A stretch of 64,000 bases of DNA, from the sequence record MK773491.1; one strand, 5' to 3'. Positions 1-53,565 of this stretch are shown one piece after another. The position numbers and the translations under genes were made by a program. Position 1 is the first letter of the stretch. Each line of letters opens with the position of its first letter. The notes below the pieces were generated by a model that was not told the origin of the DNA, made no database searches, and saw only the letters and a program-made list of their open reading frames with translations.

Positions 1-129
1 GCGACGAGTGCAGGGAGTATTGCATCTGTTAGTACTGGATTACATTTTCCACTAATGAAACGTTTACCGAAGACAATACTCTTTGGTGGCTATACTGAAG
101 TGAATATGGAGAAAAAAGATAAGAAATGA
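1..129 (+). CDS. 3' end of a probable virion/head protein (truncated by window)
   Basis: Open frame 1 reads ATSAGSIASVSTG...KKDKK*; its TGA overlaps the ATG at 126 (ATGA coupling). Confidence 0.6.
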   Translation, partial: ATSAGSIASVSTGLHFPLMKRLPKTILFGGYTEVNMEKKDKK

Positions 130-527: not shown

Positions 528-554
528 CGGAAAGGTTTTCTTTTTGGAGATACA

Positions 555-1490: not shown

Positions 1491-1711
1491 TGAGAATAGC
1501 CAAAAGTGAATTTGGCGTTTCGGTAATGGTATCTAATGAAGAATATCGTGTTATTCGTAAAATAAAATCATTGGGCCGTGTCAATCGTGACATGGTTCCT
1601 GATTACTATCAGGAAATTGCTGATAAATTAGTATCTCGTGGAGTTCTAAATAGAATAGAAATTGGCGAGAAAGAATACTATGAACCAGTGAGGATAAAGA
1701 AAAATGATTGA
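1490..1711 (+). CDS. hypothetical small basic protein (possible winged helix)
   Basis: 73-aa ORF overlapping neighbours at both ends. Confidence 0.6.
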   Translation: MRIAKSEFGVSVMVSNEEYRVIRKIKSLGRVNRDMVPDYYQEIADKLVSRGVLNRIEIGEKEYYEPVRIKKND

Positions 1712-2444: not shown

Positions 2445-2475
2445 ATTAGAATTTAATCTTATAAGGAAATAAGGA

Positions 2476-3108: not shown

Positions 3109-3120
3109 GAGAGGTGCTAA

Positions 3121-3450
3121 ATGAGATTCAGTGATTTAACTGAAGAAGCACCCGCAAAAGATATTCGCAACATGATTACCAGTGTTGCGTTATCTCTAGT
3201 AGCTAGTGGGCGTGAAAATGTTAGTGTGCAATCTCTAATTGCAGAAATTAAAAAACGTACTAACATTGATGTTCCTTATAATGTTATGATGGATATCTTA
3301 AACTCTTTGCCATTTGTACAGGATGCCAATTCTGATATGGTACAATTTGCTGGTGCTGATGAAAGCAGTAGTGAAGAGGGTGAAAGCTCAGAAGACATTG
3401 TAAGCGATATGGCTACAAAAGCTGCAACCAGCAGCATGAACCAAAAATAA
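3121..3450 (+). CDS. hypothetical protein
   Basis: 109-aa ORF, GAGG RBS, N-terminus MRFSDLTEE. Confidence 0.7.
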   Translation: MRFSDLTEEAPAKDIRNMITSVALSLVASGRENVSVQSLIAEIKKRTNIDVPYNVMMDILNSLPFVQDANSDMVQFAGADESSSEEGESSEDIVSDMATKAATSSMNQK

Positions 3451-3452
3451 TT

Positions 3453-3481
3453 GAGACAAAACAGAATAAATGTGCTATAAT
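3453..3481 (+). promoter_or_regulatory. phage promoter, class GRGACAAA-N10-TGTGMTATAAT
   Basis: GAGACAAA 3453-3460, TGTGCTATAAT 3471-3481. Confidence 0.7.
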
Positions 3482-3494
3482 AGGAGTACAACGG

Positions 3495-4202
3495 ATGTAC
3501 ACACCACCTATGATTGAACGGTACACTTATCTCGGTTATGATCGTATCGAAGGCGGCCCCGAAGGTCGCCTTTATGCTACCCCTACCGGGAATCTACCGT
3601 CAGTTACTACCATCTTGAGTGCTACCTCAGATGATGAAGGACTAAAACAGTGGCGAGCATTCGTCGGTGAACAAAAAGCAAATGAAATAACATTGGAAGC
3701 AACAACTATCGGTACGTTCATGCATGAGAATTTAGAACGCCGTTTGATTGGAGAAGAAGATCATTTGGGCGGTATGCCAATTCGAGTGTTAGCTCGTAAC
3801 ATGGCAGACGTTATTCAGCGTGAAGCATGGCCTAAAATCAATGAAGTATGGGGGCAAGAAGTTCCTTTATTTTATGAAGGTCTTTGGGCTGGAACTACTG
3901 ACTTAGTAGGAATGCACGATGGTATACCAACGATAATGGATTACAAAAACTCTCGTAAACCTAAGAAATGGGATAAGATTGAGAACTACAGATTACAGAC
4001 CGCAGCATATGCATTAGCACATAATCAAATGTTCGGAACTGATATACAACGTGGAGTAATCTTTATCTGTGTTCGAGAAGACCCAAACAATCTTCAGTAC
4101 CAAGAATTCGTAATTGAAGGACAGGACTTTGAAGATGCGAAAAAAGGTTGGATTGAAAGAGTCGAGCAATACTATATTATGAGAGGCGATATTACAAAAT
4201 GA
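3495..4202 (+). CDS. PD-(D/E)XK exonuclease (lambda-exo/MGME1-like)
   Basis: PSVTTILS, GTFMHENLE, AGTTDLVG, IMDYKNS, QTAAYALA motifs. Confidence 0.85.
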   Translation: MYTPPMIERYTYLGYDRIEGGPEGRLYATPTGNLPSVTTILSATSDDEGLKQWRAFVGEQKANEITLEATTIGTFMHENLERRLIGEEDHLGGMPIRVLARNMADVIQREAWPKINEVWGQEVPLFYEGLWAGTTDLVGMHDGIPTIMDYKNSRKPKKWDKIENYRLQTAAYALAHNQMFGTDIQRGVIFICVREDPNNLQYQEFVIEGQDFEDAKKGWIERVEQYYIMRGDITK

Positions 4203-4756
4203 ACAGAGCTATGAAAGAAGATATTTTTACAATTAAAGCAATCGAAAGTAAAGGTTATAAAATGGAAGAACTAATTGTTCTATCCGATGAAGAACTTGAT
4301 GAATTACCAATTTCTCAACGTCTAATCGATGGCATTAAAACTGTTAAAGCACGTGGAGGAAAAACGGCTGATCAAATCGCAGAAGAGATTGCCGATTTAA
4401 TGACGAAAGACGTCACTAGTACTGAAGAAGTTGATGTTCCTGAAGTCGTTGAAGTTTACGAAACTCTATCTCCAGAACACATTGCTATTCAAGAAGAAAT
4501 CATTGAAGAAGCTCTTGAAGAAGAAATTGCTGAAGATGAAGTTCAAATTGTTCGTGTTGAATCTGCACCAGAAGATATTAAAACTGTAGAAGAAGTTCTA
4601 GAGACTAAATCTTATAAATCATTCCAACCATACATCAAACTACTACAATCTGAAGTTCCTAAAGTTATTTTGGATGCAGTTGATAGTACTCTAATTTCAG
4701 AACTAATTGAAAAGCGTATCACTGCTGTTAAACAAGCAGCGAAAAAAACTAAATAA
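4199..4756 (+). CDS. hypothetical acidic protein
   Basis: 185-aa ORF, ATGA overlap with the nuclease gene. Confidence 0.7.
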   Translation: MNRAMKEDIFTIKAIESKGYKMEELIVLSDEELDELPISQRLIDGIKTVKARGGKTADQIAEEIADLMTKDVTSTEEVDVPEVVEVYETLSPEHIAIQEEIIEEALEEEIAEDEVQIVRVESAPEDIKTVEEVLETKSYKSFQPYIKLLQSEVPKVILDAVDSTLISELIEKRITAVKQAAKKTK

Positions 4757-4784
4757 TCCTATACTATATTAGGAGAATTTAGGT

Positions 4785-5357
4785 ATGGCACAAAAACAAA
4801 TTGCCTTACAACAAGTACGTTCGGGTAAACAACGTGATTTACCCGATGCTCTTGCGAAAGGCCAGATTGGATTCAGTACTGACGTGGGTCGTTTATTCAT
4901 TGGGCTACCGAGTAGTTCAGAACCAGCATCATTAGTTGCTGGTCGTAACTGGACTAATGCACCAAACAGCGGGAAAGAAAACGTAGAAATCATTACTGAA
5001 TTTACACCTTGGGAAATTATTAACAGTGTGGTTAATAAACCTAATGTATTAACACTTCCAGCTAACCAAAAAACTACTACAACTATTCGTACATCGTCTC
5101 GTGTATTCCTTGAGTATGTTGCATACGATAATGATAAATTGTTAGAAACTGGTTCAGTTCAATTGGTAGCAGTTGATACAACGAATGTATTAATCTCTCA
5201 ACAAAACAACACTAACAAATCTGATGGTATCGTTGCGATAGATTTTGAACAACCATCATATGACGTAGGTACTAAACGTTTAACTATTACTATTAACAAT
5301 CGAAGTAGTACCGCAATAACACTTGAATTTATTATAAGAGGGTGGGATAAGCAATAA
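4785..5357 (+). CDS. putative virion structural protein
   Basis: N-terminal LAKGQIGFSTDVGRLFIG resembles repeats at the start of tail-fibre/structural proteins; beta-rich remainder. Confidence 0.5.
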   Translation: MAQKQIALQQVRSGKQRDLPDALAKGQIGFSTDVGRLFIGLPSSSEPASLVAGRNWTNAPNSGKENVEIITEFTPWEIINSVVNKPNVLTLPANQKTTTTIRTSSRVFLEYVAYDNDKLLETGSVQLVAVDTTNVLISQQNNTNKSDGIVAIDFEQPSYDVGTKRLTITINNRSSTAITLEFIIRGWDKQ

Positions 5358-5378
5358 AGGCGAATCCCGCCTTTTATT
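5356..5378 (+). terminator. intrinsic terminator
   Basis: AAAGGCG-aatcc-CGCCTTT followed by T-rich tract. Confidence 0.75.
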
Positions 5379-5384
5379 TCCCCT

Positions 5385-5392
5385 TATAAATA
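5385..5392 (+). promoter_or_regulatory. T4-late-like promoter TATAAATA
   Basis: Exact TATAAATA 33 nt upstream of nrdA. Confidence 0.5.
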
Positions 5393-5424
5393 TAAAACTG
5401 AAATAATTAACACAAGGAAGTCAA

Positions 5425-7770
5425 ATGATCAACGTTACGAAACGTAATGGTGCTAAGGAAGCACTTAATCTTGAAAAAATTCACCAAATTCTATTTTTCG
5501 CTTGCGAAGGACTAACTGGAGTGTCCGTATCAGAAATTGAGGTTCGAGCACAGTTACAGTTCTATGAAGGTATCGAAACTAATGCAATTCATGATATTCT
5601 AATTAAAGCTGCTTCTGAACTAATTACAGTTGATACCCCTAACTATCAATATGTAGCAGGTCGTCTAATTAACTATTCACTACGTAAGAAAGTGTATGGT
5701 AATTATGAACCACCAAAATTCGCTGCACATGTTCAAGATCTAATCGATCGTGATGTATATGACAAAGAAATTCTTGAAAAATATACACTAACTGAAATCG
5801 AAGAACTAGGTAAGTACATCAAACATAAACGTGATGATAGATTCACTTTCGTTGCAATGAAGCAATGGGAAGGGAAATATCTTTGTAAGCACCGTGTTAC
5901 TAAGCAAATTTACGAAACCCCACAAATGGCTTACATGATGATTGCAGCAATCGTCTTTATGGAGTACAATCGTGATGTTCGTATGAGCTATGTAAAACGT
6001 TTCTATGATGCAATCAGTAATTTTGATATTAGTCTTCCAACACCAATCATGGCTGGTCTTCGTACTAATACACGTCAGTTTAGTTCATGTGTGGTTCTAA
6101 ACGTGGGTGATAGCCTCGATAGTATCGGTGCTTCCAACCATGCTATTTTACGTTATATCTCACGTAAAGCTGGTCTAGGAATTAACTACGGTCGTGTTCG
6201 TGCAATCGATTCAGAAATCCGTGGTGGTGATGCGGTACATACAGGTTTAATTCCTTTCATTACTGCAAGTACTAAAACTGTTAAATCATGCTCTCAAGGC
6301 GGTGTACGTGGTGGTGCAGCAACTATTCACTTCCCACTTTGGCATCTAGAATTTGAAAATCTTGTAGTACTTAAGAACAACAAAGGAACCGAGTTTAACC
6401 GTGTTCGTCAAAGTGACTACTGCTTCCAAATCAACAAAACTTTATACGAGCGTCTAACCAAAAAAGGTGATATTACTTTCTTCTCACCTAGTGACGTACC
6501 CGGTCTATATGATGCATTCTGCTCAGACCAAAAAGAATTCGCACGTTTGTATAAGAAGTATGAAGCAGACCCTACTATTCGTAAGAAAGTACTACCAGCG
6601 ATTGACGTATTCACTGTTCTAATGCAACAACGTGCAGAGACAGGGCGTATCTACGTTCAGAACATTGATTTGACTAACGAACACTCACCATTCGATCCTA
6701 AAGTGGCACCAGTTGAGCAAAGTAATCTTTGCCAAGAAATTGCATTACCTTCAGTTCCATTTGATGATGTAAACAGTGGTGAAGATGGTCTAATCAGCCT
6801 TTGCACACTAAGTGCAATTAATTGGGGCAACTTTGACAAACCTGAAGATATGGAAAATGCTTGCGATCTAGCTGTTCGTGCGTTAGACTCTCTACTTGAT
6901 TATCAGGACTACCCTGTAATCCACGCAGAACGAGCTACACGAGCTTATCGACCACTAGGTGTGGGTATCATCAACTTGGCATATTTCCTTGCTAAACGTG
7001 GCCTACGTTACGATGATGGTGCATTGGAAACCGTAAACACATGGGCTGAAGCATGGTCTTATTACCTACTTAAATCTTCCGTTCAACTAGCGAAAGAAAA
7101 AGGTAAATGTGAATGGTTTGATAACCTAAAATATGCACAAGGTATTCTACCAATTGACACTTATAAAAAATCCGTCGATGAACTAGTAGGTACTGAACTA
7201 AAAATGGATTGGGATTCCCTACGTGCTGATATTGCACAATACGGTATTCGTAATGCTACTACTATGGCTCTAATGCCAGCAGAAACTAGTGCTCAAATTA
7301 GTAACAGTACTAATGGTATTGAACCACCACGTAGTCTAGTATCCGTTAAAGCATCTAAAGATGGTATTCTAAAACAAGTTGTTCCTGAAATTGGTAAATT
7401 GAAGAACAAATACACCCTACTATGGGATCAAAAGAACAACGAAGGTTATATTAAAATTTGTGGTGTACTACAAAAATATATTGACCAAAGTATCAGTGCA
7501 AATACTAGTTATAACCCAGAACACTTCCCAGATAAGAAACTATCAATGAAAGTACTTCTAGGTGAACTACTAATGTGCTACAAGTATGGACTTAAAAACC
7601 TATACTATATGAACACCAACGATGGTAGTGGTGAAATTGATATTGAACTACTAGAGAAGTCTCAGTCAGAACAAAAGGCTGAAGCGGAAGAACTAGTACC
7701 AACAGGTGGATTCATTCTACCAAACCTATCAATGCTACCAGATGATGATTGCGATAGTTGCAAAATCTAA
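5425..7770 (+). CDS. nrdA: ribonucleotide reductase class Ia alpha subunit
   Basis: ATP cone (VTKRNG), PTPIMAG, QFSSC, SQGGVRGG, SNLCQEI, MPAETS, C-terminal CDSC; uninterrupted. Confidence 0.98.
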   Translation: MINVTKRNGAKEALNLEKIHQILFFACEGLTGVSVSEIEVRAQLQFYEGIETNAIHDILIKAASELITVDTPNYQYVAGRLINYSLRKKVYGNYEPPKFAAHVQDLIDRDVYDKEILEKYTLTEIEELGKYIKHKRDDRFTFVAMKQWEGKYLCKHRVTKQIYETPQMAYMMIAAIVFMEYNRDVRMSYVKRFYDAISNFDISLPTPIMAGLRTNTRQFSSCVVLNVGDSLDSIGASNHAILRYISRKAGLGINYGRVRAIDSEIRGGDAVHTGLIPFITASTKTVKSCSQGGVRGGAATIHFPLWHLEFENLVVLKNNKGTEFNRVRQSDYCFQINKTLYERLTKKGDITFFSPSDVPGLYDAFCSDQKEFARLYKKYEADPTIRKKVLPAIDVFTVLMQQRAETGRIYVQNIDLTNEHSPFDPKVAPVEQSNLCQEIALPSVPFDDVNSGEDGLISLCTLSAINWGNFDKPEDMENACDLAVRALDSLLDYQDYPVIHAERATRAYRPLGVGIINLAYFLAKRGLRYDDGALETVNTWAEAWSYYLLKSSVQLAKEKGKCEWFDNLKYAQGILPIDTYKKSVDELVGTELKMDWDSLRADIAQYGIRNATTMALMPAETSAQISNSTNGIEPPRSLVSVKASKDGILKQVVPEIGKLKNKYTLLWDQKNNEGYIKICGVLQKYIDQSISANTSYNPEHFPDKKLSMKVLLGELLMCYKYGLKNLYYMNTNDGSGEIDIELLEKSQSEQKAEAEELVPTGGFILPNLSMLPDDDCDSCKI

Positions 7771-7778
7771 TTAAAAAG

Positions 7779-7806
7779 AGTCCCACATGAAGTGGGACTT
7801 TTCTTT
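7779..7806 (+). terminator. intrinsic terminator/hairpin between nrdA and nrdB
   Basis: AGTCCCAC-atgaa-GTGGGACT plus T tract. Confidence 0.7.
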
Positions 7807-7833
7807 CACAGAAATAAACAAAAGGAATTGTAA

Positions 7834-8958
7834 ATGTCAGTATTTAAAATTAACGAGAAATCACACTTAGAAAAGCATATGTTTTTTGACGAGTCTGTTG
7901 ATATTCAACGTTTTGAATCCGTAAAGTATCCAGCATTGGAAAAATTAACAGAACAGCAAAAGAGTTTCTTCTGGACACCAGAAGAAGTAGATGTGACTCG
8001 TGATAAAATTGACTTCTCCGGTTTGAGTGATAATGAGAAACATATCTTCACATCGAACCTTAAACGTCAAATCCTTCTAGATTCAGTACAAGGACGTGGC
8101 CCGAACTTAATGCTACTACCTTATGCATCCCTACCTGAACTAGAAAACTTTATTGAAACTTGGGCTTTCTTTGAAGGTGCTATCCATAGTCGTTCATATA
8201 CGCATATTATTCGTAACGTATATCCAAACCCATCCGAAGTGTTTGATACTATGCTCGACATTCCTGAGATTACTTCTTGTGCTGCTGATATTGCAAAGTA
8301 CTATGATGATCTTGATGTAGCTGGCACTTACTATAAGATGCTAGGACTCGGTACTCATATTATCAATGGTGAAACTGTTGAAGTTAGCGAGTATGAACTC
8401 AAGAAGAAACTATGGCTATGCTTGAACAGCATTAACGTACTAGAAGGTATTCGCTTCTATGTATCCTTTGCATGTTCATGGGCTTTTGCAGAAAACAAAC
8501 TAATGGAAGGGAATGCTAAAATCATCCGTCTAATTTGTCGTGATGAGAACCTTCATTTAGCAGCTACCCAAATGATTCTTCGCCTACTCAAGAAAGAAGA
8601 TCCAGACTTCGCTAAAATTGCAGAAGAATGCCATGAAGAAGTACAAACAATGTTCATGGATGCAATTCGTCAAGAAGAAGAATGGGCTGACTATCTATTC
8701 AAAGATGGTTCTATTATTGGATTGAACGCTCAAATTCTAAAAGATTATATTCGTTGGATTGGTTCTAAACGTATGATTGCAGTTGGCGTTAAATGTCCAT
8801 TCAGTGTATCCAAAAACAATCCACTACCTTGGACTGTAGAATGGATCAGTAGTGCTGATGTACAAGTGGCACCACAAGAAACTGAAATAAGTTCTTATAT
8901 TATTGGTGGTATCACTAATGATATTGAAGAAAATGATTTTTCAGATTACGATTTATAA
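7834..8958 (+). CDS. nrdB: ribonucleotide reductase class Ia beta subunit
   Basis: FFWTPEEV, LLDSVQGR, HSRSY, LEGIRFYVSF, RDENLH, VAPQETEISSY. Confidence 0.98.
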   Translation: MSVFKINEKSHLEKHMFFDESVDIQRFESVKYPALEKLTEQQKSFFWTPEEVDVTRDKIDFSGLSDNEKHIFTSNLKRQILLDSVQGRGPNLMLLPYASLPELENFIETWAFFEGAIHSRSYTHIIRNVYPNPSEVFDTMLDIPEITSCAADIAKYYDDLDVAGTYYKMLGLGTHIINGETVEVSEYELKKKLWLCLNSINVLEGIRFYVSFACSWAFAENKLMEGNAKIIRLICRDENLHLAATQMILRLLKKEDPDFAKIAEECHEEVQTMFMDAIRQEEEWADYLFKDGSIIGLNAQILKDYIRWIGSKRMIAVGVKCPFSVSKNNPLPWTVEWISSADVQVAPQETEISSYIIGGITNDIEENDFSDYDL

Positions 8959-8963
8959 TACTT

Positions 8964-8987
8964 AGGGACACATTGTGTCCCTTTTTC
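8964..8987 (+). terminator. intrinsic terminator
   Basis: AGGGACAC-att-GTGTCCCT plus TTTT. Confidence 0.75.
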
Positions 8988-9000
8988 ATTGGAGTTATAT

Positions 9001-9183
9001 ATGAGCGACGTTTTTTCTTTTATGAGAGATGTTGAGTACGTAATAGTACTAGAAGGTTCTATTCAATTAACAGGTATGGTTGAAGAAACTTATGATAACG
9101 GTATTCAGTTACATGATGGAACCTGCATTCCACAGGATAAAATTTTATTTTTCAAAGCAAATCTTGGGACAAATCCCGAATAA
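9001..9183 (+). CDS. hypothetical protein (small beta-barrel/Sm-like?)
   Basis: GGAG at 8991-8994 supports ATG 9001. Confidence 0.55.
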   Translation: MSDVFSFMRDVEYVIVLEGSIQLTGMVEETYDNGIQLHDGTCIPQDKILFFKANLGTNPE

Positions 9184-9194
9184 TGTGATATAAT
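9166..9194 (+). promoter_or_regulatory. phage promoter, class GGGACAAA-N10-TGTGATATAAT
   Basis: GGGACAAA 9166-9173, TGTGATATAAT 9184-9194. Confidence 0.75.
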
Positions 9195-9222
9195 AAACAC
9201 ATCAATAACACAGGAGAAAAAA

Positions 9223-9456
9223 ATGGATAAAAACGCACTAAACGAAATGGTAGAAGAAAGCATTGAAACCGCTGGTGAAGAAGTTGGATACACTCTAAGC
9301 GAAGAAGAACTAGAATATTCTAAAAAAATCATTGCTCAACTATCTGGCTATTACGCTCGTAAAGATGCTAAGAAAGTAGAATATCGTAAAATCAAACAGC
9401 GTCGTCGTGCGGCAAACAAAACTGCAAAAGCATCTCGTCGTAAGAACCGCAAATAA
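9223..9456 (+). CDS. hypothetical protein, acidic N-half and very basic C-tail
   Basis: 77-aa ORF, AGGAG RBS. Confidence 0.7.
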   Translation: MDKNALNEMVEESIETAGEEVGYTLSEEELEYSKKIIAQLSGYYARKDAKKVEYRKIKQRRRAANKTAKASRRKNRK

Positions 9457-9465
9457 GAGGTATTG

Positions 9466-9858
9466 ATGAATTTCACTTTTGAACAAATTCAAGAGACTTT
9501 TCCTAAACACGCCAACCGCTCTAAGCGGTTGCGTAAGAAGTTACATGTAGATGACTTCGCGGAAATTATGTTTTCGTTTACATTAAAAATTCCAGTATTT
9601 GATTTATCACCCAAGCTACAGGATGCTTGTTTGGATATCATGTGTGAACATGATGCTGGATGTTTTATCTTTTCTGATAGTTCATCTGCATCATTCAGTG
9701 TATTGTCTGGATTATTAAAGAAAAGTGTAAAAAATCAAGAAGAAATTATTTCGTACATTACGAATTTGATTTCAAAACTTTCAGAAGTAGAAAAAGAATT
9801 TAGGAATATTGACGCAGTACATGTAACATATGGTGATGCGTATTATGGAGAATGGTAA
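9466..9858 (+). CDS. yggL: YggL/DUF469-like protein
   Basis: NRSKRLRKKLHVDDFAE matches the YggL N-terminal signature (NRSRRLRKKMHIDEFQE). Confidence 0.7.
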   Translation: MNFTFEQIQETFPKHANRSKRLRKKLHVDDFAEIMFSFTLKIPVFDLSPKLQDACLDIMCEHDAGCFIFSDSSSASFSVLSGLLKKSVKNQEEIISYITNLISKLSEVEKEFRNIDAVHVTYGDAYYGEW

Positions 9859-10550
9859 TGAATGTACAAACCCAAATTGCACAAGTAGCTAATTTTATGA
9901 AAGCTGCTGGTCAAGAAATCAATATTACACCAACAGCAGTAAGTCTAGGTGTTGCAAATCTACGTTATAATCTAATCATTGAAGAGATCGCAGGTAGGAA
10001 TGAATTTCAATACTGTTCCGAACGTGATGACCTTGTTGGTATGCTAGATGGTCTATGTGATATTCTTTATGTTGTATATGGTGCAGCACTAACCTTTGGT
10101 GTTAAAATTAAAAGTACTGAAGTAGCTCATGGCATCGCGGCTGGTAAATTAGCTCCTGCACATATTTCAATTGACGCAGCTAAGAATATGATTTTCGATA
10201 GTGATCAATTTGTAGTAGGATACAAAACAGGAAATCTACATCTAGTAGAACAATCATTAACGAACATTGTTAATGTTGTTTATGAGTATGCTCGCGTGAT
10301 TAATGTTGATTTATCTGGTGCATTCAATGAAGTTCATCAATCTAACATGAGCAAGTTCAGCCCTACTAAAGAACATGCAGAAGAAAGTGCAGCGACTCGT
10401 CTAATTAAAGGTGATGAGAAATATCGCAATATTTATGTTGACAGTGTAACTATTGATGGTGAAACATTGTGGATGATCAAACGCACTGAAGATAACAAGA
10501 TTCTAAAAAGTCTTAATTTCTTTGAGCCTGATCTAAAAAAATATGTATAA
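9858..10550 (+). CDS. MazG-like NTP pyrophosphohydrolase (DR2231-type)
   Basis: LIIEE, DGLCDILYVVYG, AFNEVHQSNMSK; start set at 9858 from GGAG spacing. Confidence 0.8.
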   Translation: MNVQTQIAQVANFMKAAGQEINITPTAVSLGVANLRYNLIIEEIAGRNEFQYCSERDDLVGMLDGLCDILYVVYGAALTFGVKIKSTEVAHGIAAGKLAPAHISIDAAKNMIFDSDQFVVGYKTGNLHLVEQSLTNIVNVVYEYARVINVDLSGAFNEVHQSNMSKFSPTKEHAEESAATRLIKGDEKYRNIYVDSVTIDGETLWMIKRTEDNKILKSLNFFEPDLKKYV

Positions 10551-10554
10551 AGAA

Positions 10555-10576
10555 AAAGGAGGCTTTTGCCTCCTTT
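10555..10576. terminator. bidirectional terminator between convergent genes
   Basis: AAAGGAGGC-tttt-GCCTCCTTT. Confidence 0.85.
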
Positions 10577-10583
10577 AATTATG

Positions 10584-11987
<1,404 letters not shown>

Positions 11988-12010
11988 TTATTTTGTTTTT
12001 GTTATGTAAC

Positions 12011-12016
12011 TATTTA
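12011..12016 (-). promoter_or_regulatory. late-like promoter TAAATA for the holin-like pair
   Basis: TATTTA on + strand, about 40 nt upstream of the 11972 start. Confidence 0.45.
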
Positions 12017-12036
12017 GCAACAAAATATGATTTTTT

Positions 12037-12065
12037 GGGACAAATCGGAAATGATGTGATATAAT
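12037..12065 (+). promoter_or_regulatory. phage promoter, class GGGACAAA-N10-TGTGATATAAT
   Basis: GGGACAAA 12037-12044, TGTGATATAAT 12055-12065. Confidence 0.75.
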
Positions 12066-12095
12066 ATAAAAACATACAACTAACGAGGAACATAT

Positions 12096-12509
12096 ATGTT
12101 GGATATTGTTGTAAATCTTATAGGTATAATATTCTTTACAATATTAGCGGCTTCTGGCTTTACACTAACTGCACAAATATTTTTGTGGGTGAGTGTCTTT
12201 GTTTTTTCTGTTCTAACATTCATCGCATGGATTACGGTAGAACATAACAAAAATCTTTATAAAAGTGGGAAAAGATTATCAAAAGATTTTATTCAAATGA
12301 TACCACTTTTAGCAAATACAGATTTTGATACAAAATGTGCACACATTTTCTGTGCAAGTATTATTATTGCAATCATTGCATTTTACTTACTACATGTTGT
12401 ATTTCTATCAATTGCAGTTATAGCAGTAATGATTTTACGCATTGTAGTACTACAGAATATAAAGGAGTTTATTCGTAATGTCGAAAATGATCCTAGCCAC
12501 GAACAGTAA
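12096..12509 (+). CDS. hypothetical multi-pass membrane protein
   Basis: About 4 hydrophobic segments, GAGGA RBS. Confidence 0.7.
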   Translation: MLDIVVNLIGIIFFTILAASGFTLTAQIFLWVSVFVFSVLTFIAWITVEHNKNLYKSGKRLSKDFIQMIPLLANTDFDTKCAHIFCASIIIAIIAFYLLHVVFLSIAVIAVMILRIVVLQNIKEFIRNVENDPSHEQ

Positions 12510-12981
12510 TGGTGGAATTGGTATAAACAATACGATTCCTTGGCATAGTTCAGCAGATTTTAAACACTTCAAAGAAGAGACTATGGATAAAATCGTTATT
12601 ATGGGTTTTAACACTTGGAAGTCTCTACCTAAACGCCCACTACCCGGACGATTAAACATCGTCCTTCTTTCTCGCGAGTACAGTAAAGAGAACCGCGATG
12701 ATGTTGATAAAGATACTTCAGTACTCTTTCTTGATATCGAAAACTTAGAAAGTATTATTGCTAATAACCCCGATTGTGTTGTCATCGGTGGAGCTAAAAT
12801 TTATGAAGAAGCAATAAAGTATGTTGATACAATTGTACTAAGTATAATTGAGGGGGAGCATGAGTGTGATACCTTTTTTAATATTCACACCCATGCAAGG
12901 GAAGAGAACGTTCATTTAGAATTGGGTTTGGTTAAAATGTTAGATGATGGAACTATGGTAGAATATTGGAATACTATATAA
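12478..12981 (+). CDS. frd: dihydrofolate reductase
   Basis: GGIGINNTIPW, DFKHFK, VIMGFNTWKSLP.RPLPGRLNIVL, VIGGAKIY. Confidence 0.95.
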   Translation: MSKMILATNSNGGIGINNTIPWHSSADFKHFKEETMDKIVIMGFNTWKSLPKRPLPGRLNIVLLSREYSKENRDDVDKDTSVLFLDIENLESIIANNPDCVVIGGAKIYEEAIKYVDTIVLSIIEGEHECDTFFNIHTHAREENVHLELGLVKMLDDGTMVEYWNTI

Positions 12982-12995
12982 TTGGGGTATAAAGG

Positions 12996-13430
12996 ATGTA
13001 TACGATTTACACTGATGGATCATGTTTAGGCAATCCGGGGCCGGGTGGTGTTGGGATTGTAGTACTTAAAGATGGAGAGGAAATTGGTCGCTTCTCTTTT
13101 GGTGAGAAGCACACCACAAACAACCGAATGGAACTACTTGCAGCCATGAGTGGAATTGCATACGTTAAAGAAACTTTTGGTTATGATAGTAAGATAAAGG
13201 TAATAACTGATTCTCAATATGTCGTGAACGGAATGACACAATGGAGACATGGTTGGAAGAAAACAAATTGGAAAGGTTGTAAAAAGAATCTAGATTTGTG
13301 GAAAGAGATTGATGTTTTGGGGGATGATTGTGAATTTGGATGGGTTCGCGGTCATAACAAAGACCATTACAATGAAATAGCTGATGACTTAGCACAAGCA
13401 GCAGCACATGAGGCGAAGGAGACGCAATGA
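12996..13430 (+). CDS. rnhA: ribonuclease HI
   Basis: YTDGSCLGNPGPGG, TNNRMEL, TDSQYV, KNLDLW, WVRGH, NEIADDLA. Confidence 0.95.
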   Translation: MYTIYTDGSCLGNPGPGGVGIVVLKDGEEIGRFSFGEKHTTNNRMELLAAMSGIAYVKETFGYDSKIKVITDSQYVVNGMTQWRHGWKKTNWKGCKKNLDLWKEIDVLGDDCEFGWVRGHNKDHYNEIADDLAQAAAHEAKETQ

Positions 13431-39951: not shown

Positions 39952-40325
39952 TTTGGATTGCATTGATAGTTGTAGTATCTCTATATTTTCTATATTTTGT
40001 ACTACGCAGTTGTGCAGTACTACAAGGTCTTTATTTCAAAACTGGCACTAAATCAGTTGTAGGTTTAATTGGTGACTATCCAAAAACCTGTATTGGTGTC
40101 GTAATCTTCTTTGTACTAATCAACATCTATGATTACAAGAAACACGTAGTCAGTATGTATGATTGTTCAGTACAGAAGACTATTCACAAAGCAGCAAATA
40201 GTGAATACTCATGGTATAATGGAGAGTGCAACTTCCAAGATAAGAATGGTGTATTCATTAACATGAAGCGTGTACGTGGTCTACCCGAAGGTACTGCTGA
40301 CCACGCAGATGATGATTTACAATAA
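39948..40325 (+). CDS. hypothetical membrane protein
   Basis: 2 TM segments, Cys pair in soluble C-domain. Confidence 0.65.
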   Translation: MIWIALIVVVSLYFLYFVLRSCAVLQGLYFKTGTKSVVGLIGDYPKTCIGVVIFFVLINIYDYKKHVVSMYDCSVQKTIHKAANSEYSWYNGECNFQDKNGVFINMKRVRGLPEGTADHADDDLQ

Positions 40326-40334
40326 GGTAAAAAT

Positions 40335-40829
40335 ATGTTTGAATGGGATCAAGAGAAGTACTTTGATCCTACCGAGGACGGTTTAACTCACATCAACACA
40401 TATAGTAAAGGAAGAACCGTATTGGGGAGGATGCTATCAAATTTTGCATACTCCCCTTTTGTGTATGAACCATACGGGAAATTTGATTCCGTTGAGGGCT
40501 TCTGGTACTGGTACTTAACTGGACAGAAGCATGAAGACTTGAGAACAGTAAGTGGTTCATATGCTAAAGTACTTGGTAGGAAATATGAAAGTGATAGAGT
40601 AGAACATTCTCTCACTGAAGAAACAATTGAAGTCATGCAAGGTGCAATAATTAGTAAGATTGCACAGAATAAAGAACTACAGAAAATGTTAATTAGTAGT
40701 ACTTTACCTCTATGTCATTATTATTTCATGTATGGACGTGTCATAAATCCCTTTGATGGTCATGATTGGTTCTCCGAGACATTGGAGGATATTCGGACGG
40801 TATTGAAACTTGGGACAAATGGTGTTTAA
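40335..40829 (+). CDS. NADAR-family protein (YbiA/T4 gp30.3-like)
   Basis: LSNFAYSPF, FDSVEGFWYW, AIISKIAQNKELQKMLIST. Confidence 0.7.
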   Translation: MFEWDQEKYFDPTEDGLTHINTYSKGRTVLGRMLSNFAYSPFVYEPYGKFDSVEGFWYWYLTGQKHEDLRTVSGSYAKVLGRKYESDRVEHSLTEETIEVMQGAIISKIAQNKELQKMLISSTLPLCHYYFMYGRVINPFDGHDWFSETLEDIRTVLKLGTNGV

Positions 40830-40840
40830 TGTGATATAAT
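40812..40840 (+). promoter_or_regulatory. phage promoter, class GGGACAAA-N10-TGTGATATAAT, driving the ncRNA
   Basis: GGGACAAA 40812-40819, TGTGATATAAT 40830-40840. Confidence 0.75.
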
Positions 40841-40845
40841 ATGTG

Positions 40846-41196
40846 TAGATATAACAATTGTGGCTGCTTTATGCAGACGTACTGAAACCGAAACCCTTGA
40901 AAACGTAAAGGGACGATGAGCATGACCACACATGCGAAGTGCAGATGAAACCCGCTCGGCGGCAATGCGGCACTATAAAAGGACACGTAAGGCACGTTAA
41001 GTCCTCTTGATAGACATATGAGGTCACTCACCAAAATGCTAAGGGAGACGTTTATACGTCGCATATAGAGCTTGATCGAATAGGCTTTGTATGATGTGGG
41101 CTAAGACCCCGACCGTTGCATATGACTGTGATAGAGAGAAACAGAGCAACCCGCTTTCGTTCTTTGACCAGTTTTAGTACGCTATAGTTGTATCTA
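40846..41196 (+). ncRNA. candidate ~350-nt structured non-coding RNA, family unidentified
   Basis: No + strand ORF; ends pair (40846-40855 with 41187-41196, 40859-40864 with 41181-41186, 40879-40888 with 41171-41180); several internal hairpins. Confidence 0.7.
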
Positions 41197-41256
41197 AAAT
41201 TCAGAGAAATTCACAATTCGATAATTCCGAGGCTACCAGCGTCAGAATCAATAATC

Positions 41257-41279
41257 AGTACTTTAATTAGTACTTTTTT
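41257..41279 (+). terminator. weak terminator after the ncRNA
   Basis: AGTACT-ttaatt-AGTACT plus TTTT. Confidence 0.45.
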
Positions 41280-41444
41280 ATTGTCTTCATTCCCCAATGG
41301 GGGGATGAAATTGCCTCTACAAACCTCGTCAGGAATAAAAGTACAATATGAATTGAGTTACGATAATACGAACGTAGTGAGTATTAAGAGTAACGAAAAT
41401 TCTTAGACAATCGTAGATTGGCTAATTAGACAATAGGAACAATA

Positions 41445-42410
41445 ATGAATAAATTAAACAGATCACAAGGTTGTTTAATGGGACTAGCTGTAGGTGATGC
41501 AGTAGGAACTACCTTAGAATTTAAACAAAGAGATTCAGAGAATATCACTGATATGGTAGGTGGTGGCCCATTCCAATTAGAAGTAGGTCAATGGACTGAT
41601 GATACCAGTATGGCATTATGTTTAGGCTATGCATTGCTAGAAGATCATAAAGTAGAAACTTCTGATTGGTCTAGATTGCAATTAGTTAATTACGTTGATT
41701 GGTACAAAAATGGTTATTGTAGTTCTAATGGATACTGCTTTGATATTGGCGGTACTACTCGTAATGCATTACTAAATTTCATCCGTAATGGTACACTTGT
41801 TAACAACGATCATTTCCTTGATTCTGGCAATGGTAGTTTAATGCGTTTAGCTCCAATCCCAATCTATTATAATACTGGTGCTGATGTTGATAAGTTCACC
41901 TACTTGTGCTATGCAGCCGATATGAGCAGTTCAACAACACATGCAAGTACTTTATGTCGTCAGTCATGTGTTGCGTTTTCTATACTACTTAATCGTGCTT
42001 TAAATGGCCCGATTGAATTAGAAAATGTTGAACATGATGTATTACAATCAAAGCGTTCATTACTTTCTTTCCAAGAAAAAGTTTGGGAAGGTCTTGTGAG
42101 TGAACCTTTAGTACTAGAAATCATGAATGGTTCTTATAAGAATAAGTCGCGTGATGAAATTAGTTCTAGTGGGTATGTTATTGATAGCTTAGAAGCCGCT
42201 CTATGGTGCTTCTGGAACACCGAAAACTTCCGTGACGCAATCCTATTAGCTGCTAACTTAGGTGACGATGCAGACACCGTAGCGGCAATTACAGGGCAGA
42301 TTGCAGGTGCTTTCTATGGTCTTGATGGTATACCAGATGAATGGGTACAGAAGATTACCAAGAAAGATGAAATTTTACAATTAGCAGAGGACTTGACAGA
42401 TGGGAATTAA
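41445..42410 (+). CDS. ADP-ribosylglycohydrolase (ARH/DraG family)
   Basis: GLAVGDAVG, WTDDTSMA, FDIGGTT, GNGSLMR, TH, NLGDDADTVAAITGQIAGA. Confidence 0.93.
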   Translation: MNKLNRSQGCLMGLAVGDAVGTTLEFKQRDSENITDMVGGGPFQLEVGQWTDDTSMALCLGYALLEDHKVETSDWSRLQLVNYVDWYKNGYCSSNGYCFDIGGTTRNALLNFIRNGTLVNNDHFLDSGNGSLMRLAPIPIYYNTGADVDKFTYLCYAADMSSSTTHASTLCRQSCVAFSILLNRALNGPIELENVEHDVLQSKRSLLSFQEKVWEGLVSEPLVLEIMNGSYKNKSRDEISSSGYVIDSLEAALWCFWNTENFRDAILLAANLGDDADTVAAITGQIAGAFYGLDGIPDEWVQKITKKDEILQLAEDLTDGN

Positions 42411-44518: not shown

Positions 44519-44547
44519 GGGACAAACTAGGATTTATGTGATATAAT
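44519..44547 (+). promoter_or_regulatory. phage promoter, class GGGACAAA-N10-TGTGATATAAT
   Basis: Directly upstream of tRNA-Ser. Confidence 0.75.
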
Positions 44548-44555
44548 ATAATTAC

Positions 44556-44646
<91 letters not shown>

Positions 44647-46845: not shown

Positions 46846-46874
46846 GGGACAAATCACTTATAATGTGATATAAT
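46846..46874 (+). promoter_or_regulatory. phage promoter, class GGGACAAA-N10-TGTGATATAAT
   Basis: Upstream of tRNA-Thr. Confidence 0.75.
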
Positions 46875-46920
46875 ATAAGTATGATAAGGAATGTGTTTGT
46901 ATGATTATCCTTATCATTTT

Positions 46921-46993
46921 GCATCTGTAGCTCAGTTGGTAGAGCAAACGCCTTGTAAGCGTTAGGCCGCTGGATCGTACCCAGTCAGGTGCA
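46921..46993 (+). tRNA. tRNA-Thr(TGT), atypical T-loop, no encoded CCA
   Basis: GCATCTG/CAGGTGC, AGCTCAGTTGGTAGAGC D arm, AACGC-CTTGTAA-GCGTT; T loop ATCGTAC; ends A-CAA. Confidence 0.75.
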
Positions 46994-47021
46994 CAACATC
47001 ATAATTCAAATATTATTCTCA

Positions 47022-53483: not shown

Positions 53484-53565
53484 CGGGGCGTATCTCAACG
53501 AGCTTCTAACTCGTCTTTAATCGAGTAACTGGAGTATGCGGGTTCGAGTCCTGCCGCCTCGACCA
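53484..53565 (+). tRNA. atypical tRNA-like RNA: TCT (Arg) anticodon arm, no D arm, G3-U70 acceptor, CCA
   Basis: CGGGGCG/CGCCTCG-A-CCA; only TATCTCA before ACGAG-CTTCTAA-CTCGT; 23-nt extra region; GCGGG-TTCGAGT-CCTGC T arm. Confidence 0.7.

What the first reader, a model, noticed from the sequence alone, without database searches (positions are those of the whole stretch)
40846..41279. Unannotated ~350-nt end-paired structured RNA with its own promoter
Seen: a class-II promoter ends at 40840, so +1 is near 40846-40847, where pairing begins. UAGAUAUAAC (40846-55) pairs with GUUGUAUCUA (41187-96); UGUGGC (40859-64) with GCUAUA (41181-86); hairpin CUGC-UUUAU-GCAG (about 40864-76); GUACUGAAAC (40879-88) with GUUUUAGUAC (41171-80). 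That is ~26 nested long-range bp with G-U wobbles. Inner hairpins: CCCUU/AAGGG (~40894-40912), GAGC/GCUC (40918-57), GGAC-ACGU/ACGU-GUCC (40981-41004), GACGU/ACGUC (~41047-60), GGG/CCC (41098-41109). GC content is visibly above the flanks; a terminator-like hairpin lies at 41257-79. It lacks tmRNA ends, the RNase P GAGGAAAGUCC motif and group I/II cores as far as I can see. Inference: a novel phage ncRNA, the best candidate for an undescribed system here.
Basis: partly seen in the sequence, partly recalled or inferred. Interest (0 to 1): 0.85.

Follow-up and report, generated by a model that had tools for sequence, protein, structure and literature searches.

The report
New pseudoknot-rich phage RNA family
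The gap holds a real, strongly conserved, highly folded non-coding RNA with its own promoter; it belongs to an apparently undescribed family found in several copies in Rak2-like giant phages and once in some integrase-bearing islands of enterobacteria, and its job is unknown.

Summary
The finding is real, but its anatomy was only partly right. The window is the end of Salmonella jumbo phage 7t3/Munch. The 615-bp unannotated gap between ORF 40335-40829 and the ADP-ribosylglycohydrolase gene carries a GGGACA-17-TGnTATAAT promoter and a structured plus-strand RNA.

I collected 87 distinct homologues (51 clusters at 90% identity). At least three copies are located per Rak2-like genome, with 4-5 BLAST places per record. 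Single copies lie in integrase-bearing chromosomal islands of Serratia, Enterobacter, Buttiauxella, Silvania and E. coli.

Covariation supports about 14 nested helices plus five long-range or pseudoknot helices. The covariation-supported helices end at 41222. Sequence conservation runs on through a C4/G6 hairpin (41288-41307) and a conserved tail to 41332.

The "terminator" is weak and is absent in many relatives.

No Rfam 15 family matches at any threshold, and I found no paper describing the family.

Best reading: a new class of large, compact, trans-acting phage RNA (a ribozyme, RNP or RNA-only assembly). A primer RNA for a replication origin is the main rival. Function is inferred, not shown.

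The parts
40812..40840 (+). Promoter: -35-like GGGACA, 17-nt spacer, extended -10 TGnTATAAT. Transcription start is inferred at about 40847.
   Evidence: 10 of 12 matches, TG present. The same word TGTGATATAATA occurs 8 times in the window, in front of mRNAs and tRNAs. A promoter is conserved in all family members.
40846..40855 (+). 5' strand of the lineage-specific terminal helix. It pairs with 41187-41196. Because its 3' partner lies inside helices 41127-31/41211-15 and 41160-63/41205-08, this helix is itself a pseudoknot.
   Evidence: compensatory change in L034. It is only 56-57% paired family-wide and absent in most types (helices 1-2).
40859..40863 (+). 5' single strand UGUGG that pairs with hairpin loop CCACA 40926-40930 (pseudoknot 1). 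In most relatives this is UGAUUGA with UCAAUCA.
   Evidence: MI scan. helix 1: 87.7% paired, 6 of 7 pairs with changes on both sides.
40864..40876 (+). Variable 5' hairpin CUGC-UUUAU-GCAG.
   Evidence: Seen in the sequence and in the MFE fold. A hairpin of variable sequence occupies this place in all members.
40879..40888 (+). 5' strand of the clade-specific helix GUACUGAAAC with GUUUUAGUAC 41171-41180.
   Evidence: About 62% paired where the segment is present (helices 3-4).
40894..40912 (+). Hairpin CCCUU / AAGGG with the conserved loop GAAAACGUA.
   Evidence: helix 5: 91.8% paired, 5 of 5 pairs covary.
40920..40935 (+). Hairpin GCAUG / CAUGC, preceded by the invariant GAUGAG. Its loop forms pseudoknot 1.
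   Evidence: helix 6.
40938..40974 (+). Helix AGUGC / GCACU. It encloses the invariant A-rich strand, the hairpin CCGC/GCGG (40952-55/40959-62, which carries a variable insertion in relatives) and the invariant CGGCAAUGCGGC.
   Evidence: helices 7 and 8: 100% and 99.7% paired.
40965..40967 (+). AUG pairs with CAU 41015-41017 (pseudoknot 2, crossing helix 40938-74).
   Evidence: helix 9: 100% paired, 3 of 3 pairs covary.
40980..41005 (+). Hairpin AGGAC / GUCCU. Its loop GCA 40992-94 pairs with UGC 41037-39 (pseudoknot 3).
   Evidence: helix 10 (5 of 5 pairs covary). helices 2-3 (98.7% paired; GC, UA and AU types).
41006..41046 (+). Invariant joiners GAUAGACAUAU and UAAGGGAG flanking the small hairpin UGAG / CUCA (41019-22/41027-30).
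   Evidence: Invariant columns. helix 11: 95.9% paired.
41047..41060 (+). Variable hairpin GACGU / ACGUC. In types B, C and D and in island copies it carries an insertion of up to ~100 nt with the loop motif UACAAUAUAG.
   Evidence: helix 12 (94.3% paired); alignments.
41062..41093 (+). Long hairpin (CAUAU/GUAUG and GCUU/AGGC). Its loop AUCGAAU 41075-81 pairs with AUUCGAU 41216-22 (pseudoknot 4).
   Evidence: helices 14-16. The loop-tail helix is 98.4% paired and 7 of 7 pairs have changes on both sides.
41098..41110 (+). Hairpin GGG / CCC.
   Evidence: helix 17: 100% paired, covaries.
41111..41158 (+). Most conserved block, CGACCGUUGC...GAUAGAGAGAAACAGAGCAACCCGCUUUC. GUUGC 41115-19 pairs with GCAAC 41146-50 (pseudoknot 5). 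That helix crosses UGUGA 41127-31 / UCACA 41211-15 and GAGAG 41134-38 / CUUUC 41154-58.
   Evidence: helices 19-21: 98-100% paired with compensatory changes.
41160..41208 (+). Helix UUCU / AGAA enclosing the type-A-specific insertion. The insertion holds the 3' strands of the two lineage-specific helices (41171-80 and 41187-96).
   Evidence: helix 22 (88.8% paired). Types B, C and D have a short loop here.
41211..41222 (+). 3' strands UCACA and AUUCGAUA. They close the 3' domain and form pseudoknot 4. This is the minimum 3' extent of the covariation-supported helices.
   Evidence: helices 16 and 20.
41229..41247 (+). Small hairpin with the conserved loop CUAYCA and the conserved CGUCAG. The pairing is weak in the window copy (GAGGC/GCGUC).
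   Evidence: Alignments. The column mapping from the window gives 31.9% paired (helix 23), so this part is not established.
41257..41280 (+). AT-rich stem AGUACU/AGUACU followed by U6: a weak terminator-like hairpin. It is absent in types C and D, and it has no U-tract in island copies.
   Evidence: helix 24 (89.3% paired where present; absent in 35-49 of 81 sequences). One search finds no terminator by the strict rule..
41288..41332 (+). Conserved C4/G6 hairpin CAUUCCCC-aau-GGGGGAUG plus the conserved tail CCUCUACAAACCUCGUCAG. It is present in every family member, including those without the terminator stem.
   Evidence: helix 25: 86.6% paired, varying as C-G/U-G. That pattern fits a plus-strand RNA structure.
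41350..41402 (+). Downstream hairpin(s): GAAUUGAGUUACG ... AAUAC-GAACGUAGUGA-GUAUU ... GUAACGAAAAUUC. The loop motif GAACGNAGUGA recurs with different stems in a subset of members. Whether it belongs to the same transcript is unknown.
   Evidence: 28 of 81 sequences by pattern; stems differ while the loop is kept.

Best explanation

Shown:
- It has its own strong sigma-70-type promoter.
- It is non-coding.
- Its plus-strand fold is conserved through compensatory changes: about 14 nested helices plus 5 long-range or pseudoknot helices, joined by invariant single strands.
- The family occurs as several diverged paralogues in Rak2-like jumbo phages, in unrelated gene neighbourhoods.
- It occurs as single copies next to the integrase in small chromosomal islands of Enterobacterales.

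Inferred mechanism: a free-standing, trans-acting RNA whose globular fold is the functional unit. It would act as a ribozyme, or as a scaffold that binds a factor common to these hosts (host take-over, or decoy of a defence or RNA-processing protein). It might also work as a self-assembling RNA-only particle, in which case the covarying loop-tail pairing would be made between molecules. It would work during infection independently of its neighbouring genes.

For: - Promoter.
- Fold stability favours the plus strand.
- Homologues at 69-80% nucleotide identity lie in intergenic gaps of 60-70 Rak2-like phage records, with 3-5 places per record. Three copies are located in Munch (40.5, 182.0 and 262.9 kb).
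- Neighbouring genes differ between copies and between phages.
- 87 distinct sequences fall in 51 clusters.
- Covariation: 86.8% of 7722 cells are paired, against 71.9% in shuffles and 39-44% in slid controls. 1203 cells carry double changes, against 355 in shuffles (0 of 500 shuffles reach this). Extra tertiary helices.
- About 60 invariant columns lie mostly in joiners.
- 1-nt indels occur inside the conserved core.
- Bacterial island copies with integrase / CI-like context.
- No Rfam family matches. PGAP leaves the E. coli copy unannotated.
- Precedent for large phage-associated RNAs that work as RNA-only oligomers (GOLLD, ROOL): PMC12286853.
Against: - There is no transcript evidence for any member. 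The 3' end is not defined.
- No partner protein, substrate or ligand is identified.
- Conservation continues about 100-180 nt beyond the last covarying helix and past a terminator-like stem. A purely trans-acting RNA does not obviously need that, and it also fits a DNA-level element.
- Covariation in related sequences can be inflated by phylogeny. The slid controls argue against this here.
- Absence from the literature is based on full-text searches of open-access papers only.
Confidence: 0.6

Rival explanations
1. Origin-of-replication module. The transcript would be a structured primer RNA (ColE1 RNA II-like, or like the R-loop origins of T4 oriF/oriG). It would form a persistent hybrid near the C4/G6 hairpin, and the downstream hairpins would act as single-strand initiation sites. 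Several copies would serve a 350-kb genome. The chromosomal islands would carry one copy so that they are replicated after excision, or by a helper jumbo phage.
For: - The unit is about 600-700 bp: promoter, then about 450 nt of folded RNA, then a G-run hairpin and further conserved hairpins. Conservation continues downstream regardless of a terminator.
- There are 3-5 dispersed copies per genome. T4 is known to use several origins (general knowledge).
- In Serratia fonticola the copy lies beside two ParB/RepB-like genes at the edge of an integrated element.
- In the E. coli island the copy is followed by about 700 nt of non-coding, GATC-rich repeats.
Against: - Five covarying pseudoknot helices and about 60 invariant, mostly unpaired positions are far more than any known primer RNA needs.
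- There is no GC-skew switch at the locus, and genes on both sides run the same way.
- The element is not found in 72,556 plasmids.
- The located copies in Munch are unevenly spaced, at 40.5, 182.0 and 262.9 kb.
Confidence: 0.15
2. The chromosomal islands are satellites of Rak2-like jumbo phages. The shared RNA/DNA unit would be the recognition module through which the satellite senses or exploits its helper, for example for replication, packaging or induction.
For: - The same roughly 600-bp unit occurs only in Rak2-like phages and in small integrase + CI-like repressor islands of the same host range.
- The E. coli island copy is of the jumbo-phage type: 429 bits, a TGTGATATAAT promoter and a U-tract terminator.
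Against: - No island protein tested has a homologue in Rak2-like phages.
- No capsid, packaging or primase genes were seen in the 8-14 kb inspected.
- This says who carries the element, not what the RNA does, so it is compatible with either mechanism above.
Confidence: 0.12
3. A cis-acting leader or riboswitch-like attenuator that controls read-through of the 41257-79 stem into the ADP-ribosylglycohydrolase gene.
For: Promoter, structured RNA, weak terminator stem and downstream gene lie on the same strand in the window. An ARH gene follows the orthologous copy in several phages.
Against: - Other copies are followed by unrelated genes, by genes on the opposite strand (121Q copy between endonuclease VII and a minus-strand gene), or by a convergent repressor gene in islands.
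- GAP32, CBB and pEa_SNUABM_12 orthologues have no ARH downstream.
- The terminator stem is missing in many members (helix 24).
Confidence: 0.04
4. A highly diverged or rearranged copy of a known catalytic or housekeeping RNA (RNase P RNA, tmRNA, or a group I intron-derived ribozyme).
For: By eye, CGACCGUUGCA...ACAGAGCAACCCGCUU resembles E. coli M1 RNA segments (CGACCAGUGCAACAGAGAGCAAACCGCC; ACAGAACCCGGCUUA). This comparison is from memory and is a lead only. The phage has many tRNA genes.
Against: - No RNase P, tmRNA or intron model scores even at E<=10 on three divergent members.
- ARAGORN finds no tmRNA.
- Covariation pairs these segments differently from RNase P P4/P10-12 (GUUGC with GCAAC; GAGAG with CUUUC).
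- Several copies per genome and presence in islands do not fit a housekeeping RNA.
- There are no flanking exons.
Confidence: 0.03
5. The real gene is a protein-coding ORF on the minus strand (for example 40741-41064, 107 aa), and the RNA structure is incidental.
For: Stop-free stretches on the minus strand are fairly long (median 76 aa across 87 members). Some annotators called small ORFs there.
Against: - The plus strand is purine-rich, which by itself depletes stops on the minus strand.
- 1-nt indels occur in the most conserved blocks.
- Variation is compensatory in helices, with G-U pairs that would be C-A on the other strand.
- The position and length of the longest stop-free stretch differ between members (43-153 aa).
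- Careful annotations (Munch, EJP2, GAP32, CBB, BF) leave the gap empty.
Confidence: 0.01

Closest known systems
GOLLD and ROOL (large 'ornate' RNAs of phages and prophages; Rfam families; cryo-EM shows RNA-only homo-oligomers, PMC12286853)
   Same: Several hundred nucleotides long, many helices and pseudoknots, and highly conserved unpaired positions. They are carried by phages and prophages, are free-standing genes often near tRNA genes, and have no known function. Complementary loop/strand pairs could be intermolecular.
   Different: No sequence or structure match to either model. The hosts differ (Enterobacterales rather than Firmicutes or rumen taxa). This RNA is smaller than GOLLD. Several diverged paralogues per genome has not been reported for those RNAs, to my knowledge. 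Oligomerisation is untested here.
Bacterial RNase P RNA (M1 RNA)
   Same: Similar size (about 350-400 nt). Long-range pseudoknot helices are flanked by invariant purine-rich strands. A few short sequence resemblances were seen from memory. The setting is tRNA-rich.
   Different: No covariance-model match. The helices shown by covariation do not map on P1-P18. It is multi-copy.
ColE1 RNA II / T4 R-loop origin transcripts
   Same: A strong promoter about 450-550 nt upstream of a G-rich element, a folded transcript, conserved hairpins downstream, and several copies in a large T4-related genome.
   Different: Known primer RNAs are not known to have multiple conserved pseudoknots. The element is not found in plasmids. 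There is no replication evidence.
phi29 pRNA
   Same: A phage-encoded structured RNA whose loop-loop complementarity covaries between relatives and builds a multimer.
   Different: pRNA is about 120-174 nt, single-copy and specific to phi29-like phages. There is no similarity in sequence or in helix layout.
PA5oct ncRNA001-004 (RNA-seq-defined lncRNAs of a related jumbo phage, PMC7318152)
   Same: Unannotated 240-620-nt transcripts in intergenic gaps of a related jumbo phage. By eye, ncRNA004 has UAUAGAUUCCG-like motifs and a terminal C-rich/G-rich hairpin.
   Different: No significant profile match, even with filters off. Homology is not established.

Membership tests
Any Rfam 15 family (4227 covariance models) | Score at or above the family's gathering threshold | tested here: not met
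   Across the whole window, only four tRNA hits reached threshold. There were none in 11 other loci.
Any Rfam 15 family (4227 covariance models) | The same family appears as a sub-threshold hit (E<=10) in divergent members | tested here: not met
   The window copy, the Serratia island copy and a type-D copy give only unrelated eukaryotic snoRNA/miRNA-type noise. No family is shared.
RNase P RNA | P4 pseudoknot between the CR-I (GAGGAAAGUCC...) and CR-V (ACAGAACCCGGCUUA) strands, and the P1-P12 core | tested here: not met
   No model hit. Covariation pairs the CR-V-like strand differently (GAGAG/CUUUC, GUUGC/GCAAC). There is no CR-I.
tmRNA | tRNA-like acceptor/T-arm formed by the two ends, plus a tag reading frame | tested here: not met
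   ARAGORN finds no tmRNA in the window. There is no Rfam tmRNA hit.
Group I / group II introns | Interrupts a host gene (flanking exons) and has a P3-P7 core or domain V | tested here: not met
   The RNA has its own promoter in an intergenic gap. There is no intron model hit.
Ornate large phage RNAs (GOLLD/ROOL type, defined by description rather than homology) | More than 400 nt, many conserved helices and pseudoknots, phage or prophage carriage, non-coding | tested here: met
   structure; carriage.
Ornate large phage RNAs (GOLLD/ROOL type) | Homology to the GOLLD or ROOL models | tested here: not met
Ornate large phage RNAs (GOLLD/ROOL type) | Homo-oligomeric RNA-only assembly | not testable with these tools
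   This needs native gels, SEC-MALS or cryo-EM of the transcript.
ColE1-type primer RNA / R-loop origin | Replication initiates at the 3' end of the transcript, and the RNA forms an RNase H-sensitive hybrid | not testable with these tools
   Only indirect evidence is available: there is no skew switch and the element is absent from plasmids.
Cis-regulatory leader / riboswitch | Constant association with a downstream gene class on the same strand | tested here: not met
   Downstream genes differ or lie on the opposite strand.
Retron / RT-associated ncRNA, IscB/TnpB omega-RNA, IS110 bridge RNA | Adjacent reverse transcriptase, IscB/TnpB or DEDD recombinase gene | tested here: not met
   Neighbours are ordinary phage genes, or tyrosine or large serine integrases and CI-like repressors. 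There is no HEARO or other model hit.

The most novel reading that the evidence does not exclude
This is a new class of natural large ribozyme or self-assembling RNA machine of enterobacterial phages, kept in several specialised paralogues by jumbo phages. The integrase-bearing islands would be satellites or defence/counter-defence elements that carry one copy to mimic or intercept the jumbo phages' RNA.
Probability: 0.2. Interest if true: 0.95.

Novelty: categorically new. Interest (0 to 1): 0.8.

Why it matters
Large RNAs with this density of conserved pseudoknots and invariant joiners are rare. The known examples are either ribozymes/RNPs (RNase P, introns, tmRNA) or the still-mysterious ornate RNAs (GOLLD, ROOL, OLE).

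This family lives in E. coli and Salmonella phages (121Q, PBECO4, Munch, 7t3) that can be grown on laboratory strains. Genetics, probing, pull-downs and cryo-EM are therefore immediately feasible, which is not the case for most ornate RNAs.

The family is multi-copy in giant phages and also present in integrative islands of the same hosts. This hints at a role in phage-host or phage-satellite conflict, or in the replication of very large genomes. Either would be new biology.

It also corrects annotation. Several GenBank records call small ORFs or a 'terminator' inside these RNAs.

Tried and rejected
- Rfam at gathering score and at E<=10 on three divergent members gave nothing.
- The RNase P idea, from short sequence resemblances recalled from memory, was rejected by the models and by the covariation-defined pairings.
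- Hammerhead-like GAUGAG...CGAA was rejected. The GAA is not conserved and there is no model hit.
- An HDV-like nested double pseudoknot has a similar topology in the 3' domain. There is no P3 or catalytic-C equivalent and no model hit.
- RNAalifold on the first MAFFT alignment proposed GAUAG/CUAUC and GCUAAGG/CCGUUGC. I dropped both. The partners are invariant or mismatched, and GUUGC was later shown to pair with GCAAC.
- Exact-motif scans of IMG/VR gave many chance hits in coding sequence of unrelated contigs. These were discarded after inspection.
- PA5oct ncRNA004 as a homologue with transcript evidence: there is no significant profile match.
- Plasmid search: no match.
- Searches for island proteins in phages, and PHROG/Pfam annotation of island and flanking proteins, gave no informative partner.
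- Even spacing of copies along the genome: the three located Munch copies are unevenly spaced. I did not fetch the rest of the genome.
- Literature searches for a description of this family found none.
- Systematic covariation downstream of 41310 failed because the alignment there is poor.
Full report
**Where the window comes from**

The region 40300-41900 is 100% identical to Salmonella jumbo phages 7t3, SE_PL, Munch and PHA46, which have genomes of about 350 kb and are relatives of Rak2/121Q. The finding lies in a 615-bp gap between ORF 40335-40829 and an ADP-ribosylglycohydrolase gene at 41445-42410. That ORF matches PHROG 652 of unknown function; its NADAR match is only 17 bits, below the cut-off. 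The curated Munch record annotates nothing in the gap.

**Checking the observation**

- **Promoter.** GGGACA-17 nt-TATAAT with a TG extension ends at 40840. The word TGTGATATAATA occurs 8 times in the window against about 1.2 expected. It precedes ordinary mRNAs as well as tRNA-Ser and tRNA-Thr, so it is the phage's general strong promoter and not a special class. The start site is inferred at about 40847.
- **Fold stability.** The plus strand of 40846-41196 folds to -106.6 kcal/mol (z = -3.86). The minus strand gives z = -1.77.
- **Composition.** G+C rises to 0.43-0.47 against about 0.35 in the flanks.

**Homologues**

BLAST finds the gap conserved at 74-80% nucleotide identity in the intergenic gaps of 60-70 Rak2-like phage records that infect Escherichia, Salmonella, Klebsiella, Cronobacter, Serratia, Erwinia, Yersinia, Pectobacterium and 'Xanthomonas'. 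Each record shows 3-5 places.

- The flanking genes are not conserved. The orthologous copy is followed by ARH in some phages but not in GAP32, CBB or pEa_SNUABM_12. A second 121Q copy lies between endonuclease VII and a minus-strand gene.
- In Munch, copies lie at about 40.5 kb, 182.0 kb and 262.9 kb (the window copy).
- Exact-motif scans of IMG/VR, of a metagenome collection and of 185,579 species genomes, followed by profile filtering, gave 87 distinct full-length sequences in 51 clusters at 90% identity.
- In IMG/VR the true members lie only on Rak2-like contigs. All other motif hits were chance matches in coding sequence.

**An unexpected second habitat**

Eight bacterial assemblies carry full-length copies at 226-256 bits: the Serratia fonticola GTA-SR07 chromosome, Serratia sp., Silvania, Buttiauxella, Enterobacter chinensis, two Enterobacteriaceae assemblies and one 2.8-kb contig of a Clostridium-labelled MAG.

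- There the RNA lies at the edge of integrated elements. The usual order is host gene, integrase, RNA, then a convergent CI-like HTH+S24 repressor and a Cro-like gene. The integrase is a tyrosine type in two loci and a large serine recombinase in four.
- In one Serratia locus the RNA lies beside two ParB/RepB-like genes.
- Two of 5,426 complete E. coli genomes have a copy. In strain LR-29-1 it sits in a 10.7-kb island between ffs and ybaA, in a 1.4-kb stretch that PGAP leaves unannotated. That copy is of the jumbo-phage type (429 bits).
- No plasmid carries the element.

**Structure**

I scanned the alignments for stacked column pairs that stay complementary while changing on both sides. I then tested an explicit structure on an 81-sequence MAFFT alignment with 46% mean column identity.

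- Over 113 pairs, 86.8% of 7722 cells are standard pairs. Shuffles give 71.9% and slid controls give 39-44%.
- 1203 cells carry changes on both sides, against 355 in shuffles. None of 500 shuffles reaches the observed values.

Helices with strong support, in window coordinates:

| Helix | Coordinates |
|---|---|
| CCCUU/AAGGG | 40894-98 / 40908-12 |
| GCAUG/CAUGC | 40920-24 / 40931-35 |
| AGUGC/GCACU | 40938-42 / 40970-74 |
| CCGC/GCGG | 40952-55 / 40959-62 |
| AGGAC/GUCCU | 40980-84 / 41001-05 |
| UGAG/CUCA | 41019-22 / 41027-30 |
| GACGU/ACGUC | 41047-51 / 41056-60 |
| CAUAU/GUAUG | 41062-66 / 41089-93 |
| GCUU/AGGC | 41070-73 / 41082-85 |
| GGG/CCC | 41098-100 / 41108-10 |
| UGUGA/UCACA | 41127-31 / 41211-15 |
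| GAGAG/CUUUC | 41134-38 / 41154-58 |
| UUCU/AGAA | 41160-63 / 41205-08 |

Five further helices cross these:

1. The 5' strand 40859-63 pairs with loop 40926-30.
2. 40965-67 pairs with 41015-17.
3. Loop 40992-94 pairs with 41037-39.
4. Loop 41075-81 pairs with 41216-22. This helix has 7 bp, and all seven pairs change on both sides.
5. 41115-19 pairs with 41146-50.

These five are supported. About 60 columns are invariant, mostly in joiners: GAUGAG, GAAACCCG, CGGCAAUGCGGC, AUAAAG, GAUAGACAUAU, UAAGGGAG, CGACCGUUGC and GAUAGRGAGAAACAGRGCAACCCGCUU. G-U pairs in many helices identify the plus strand as the folded one.

- The terminal helix 40846-55/41187-96 is genuine in the window's lineage, with a compensatory change in L034. 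It and GUACUGAAAC/GUUUUAGUAC lie in an insertion that only 'type A' copies have. Family-wide they are 56-62% paired.
- Because their 3' strands lie inside helices 41127-31/41211-15 and 41160-63/41205-08, they add yet another pseudoknot rather than closing a rod.
- UGUGGC/GCUAUA and GAGC/GCUC are not supported.
- The covariation-supported helices run at least to 41222.
- The 41257-79 stem has 2 G-C pairs, fails the terminator scan, is missing in types C and D, and lacks a U-tract in island copies.
- The C4/G6 hairpin 41288-41307 and the tail to 41332 are conserved in every member. The hairpin varies as C-G/U-G (helix 25), which suggests that it is part of the plus-strand RNA.
- Further downstream, a hairpin with loop GAACGNAGUGA (41365-85) recurs with different stems in a subset of members. 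Whether it belongs to the same transcript is open.

**Not a protein gene**

- The minus strand has longish stop-free stretches (median 76 aa). The plus strand is purine-rich, which depletes stops on the other strand.
- The longest stretch varies from 43 to 153 aa between members.
- 1-nt indels occur within the most conserved blocks.
- Substitutions are compensatory in helices.

**Comparison with known families**

- Rfam 15 gives no hit at gathering score. At E<=10, three divergent members share no family. ARAGORN finds no tmRNA.
- Short resemblances to E. coli RNase P RNA, which I recalled from memory, do not survive. The covariation-defined pairings differ and no model scores.
- There are no exons for an intron. 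There is no reverse transcriptase, IscB/TnpB or DEDD recombinase gene next to the RNA.
- By description the RNA resembles the 'ornate' large phage RNAs GOLLD and ROOL, which form RNA-only oligomers (PMC12286853). It is not homologous to them.
- A related jumbo phage, PA5oct, has RNA-seq-defined lncRNAs in similar gaps (PMC7318152). Profile searches show no significant relation.
- Eight full-text literature searches, plus a check inside one paper, found no description of this family.

**Mechanism**

What is shown is a promoter and a conserved, very intricate plus-strand fold. The RNA is independent of its neighbours, has several paralogues per jumbo phage, and is carried by integrative islands.

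- **My preferred reading (about 0.6 including the identity claim; the mechanistic part is much less certain).** This is a free-standing trans-acting RNA whose globular fold is the working unit. It could be a ribozyme, a scaffold or decoy for a factor common to Enterobacterales, or an RNA-only assembly. The paralogue-specific loop-tail code (UCGAAU, UUGUAU, UCAUAU, UUCGCAU with their complements) could be read within or between molecules.
- **Main rival (about 0.15): a primer RNA of a replication origin.** This would explain the conserved DNA downstream, the copy number, the ParB neighbours and the GATC-rich repeats in the E. coli island. It does not explain the extreme structural constraint, the absence of a skew switch, or the absence from plasmids.
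- **A satellite-helper relation (about 0.12).** The islands might be satellites of the jumbo phages. This is possible and is compatible with either mechanism.
- **A cis-regulatory leader.** This is unlikely because the downstream genes vary.

**Verdict**

This is a real and unusually interesting feature: an apparently new class of large, pseudoknot-rich phage RNA in laboratory-tractable phages. Function remains to be found by experiment.

Noticed in passing
window 53484-53562: A tRNA-like gene scores 31.2 bits with the Rfam tRNA model but is not called by ARAGORN. It starts 8 nt after a copy of the general promoter (53465-76). It may be an aberrant or intron-bearing phage tRNA.
   Followed up: partly
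window 44537-44646 and 46864-46994: tRNA-Ser(ACU) and tRNA-Thr(UGU) each have their own copy of the promoter TGTGATATAATA. For tRNA-Ser the mature 5' end lies only about 9 nt after the -10 box, so the leader would be almost absent.
   Followed up: partly
L196 (Munch) 40492-41025: A third paralogue of the RNA family (282 bits). Its 5' hairpin plus U-run is annotated in GenBank as a 'terminator' (40512-40541). Several paralogue types begin with such a terminator-like 5' hairpin just after the promoter.
   Followed up: partly
L195 (E. coli LR-29-1 chromosome) 2753-13303: A 10.7-kb island lies between ffs (SRP RNA) and ybaA. It has an IS3-disrupted integrase, a full copy of the RNA (6898-7522), about 700 nt of non-coding GATC-rich repeats, and DUF4326, DUF488 and dual-OB genes. 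It could be a satellite or a defence island.
   Followed up: partly
L123 (Serratia fonticola chromosome) 61-4300: A large serine recombinase, two tandem ParB/RepB-like genes and the RNA lie at the edge of an integrated element, next to two rof genes and tilS.
   Followed up: partly
L061 (PA5oct) 1617-2235: The RNA-seq-defined ncRNA004 has, by eye, UAUAGAUUCCG-type motifs and a terminal C-rich/G-rich hairpin like this family. Profile searches do not support homology.
   Followed up: yes
window 41350-41426: Conserved hairpins downstream of the RNA carry the loop motif GAACGUAGUGA (41365-85), followed by TTAGACA...TAAT promoter-like sequence in front of the ARH gene. The loop recurs with different stems in relatives.
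   Followed up: partly
window 40335-40829 and 41445-42410: The RNA is flanked by a protein with a weak NADAR-like match (17 bits, below the cut-off; PHROG 652) and an ADP-ribosylglycohydrolase. This would be a possible ADP-ribose-reversal pair, but the association with the RNA is not conserved.
   Followed up: partly
Metagenome contig Ga0308166_1000037 (L131, L157, L163): A 349-kb jumbo-phage contig carries three copies of the 'island-type' variant (TATACT -10 box). The island and jumbo-phage variants are therefore not cleanly separated by carrier.
   Followed up: no
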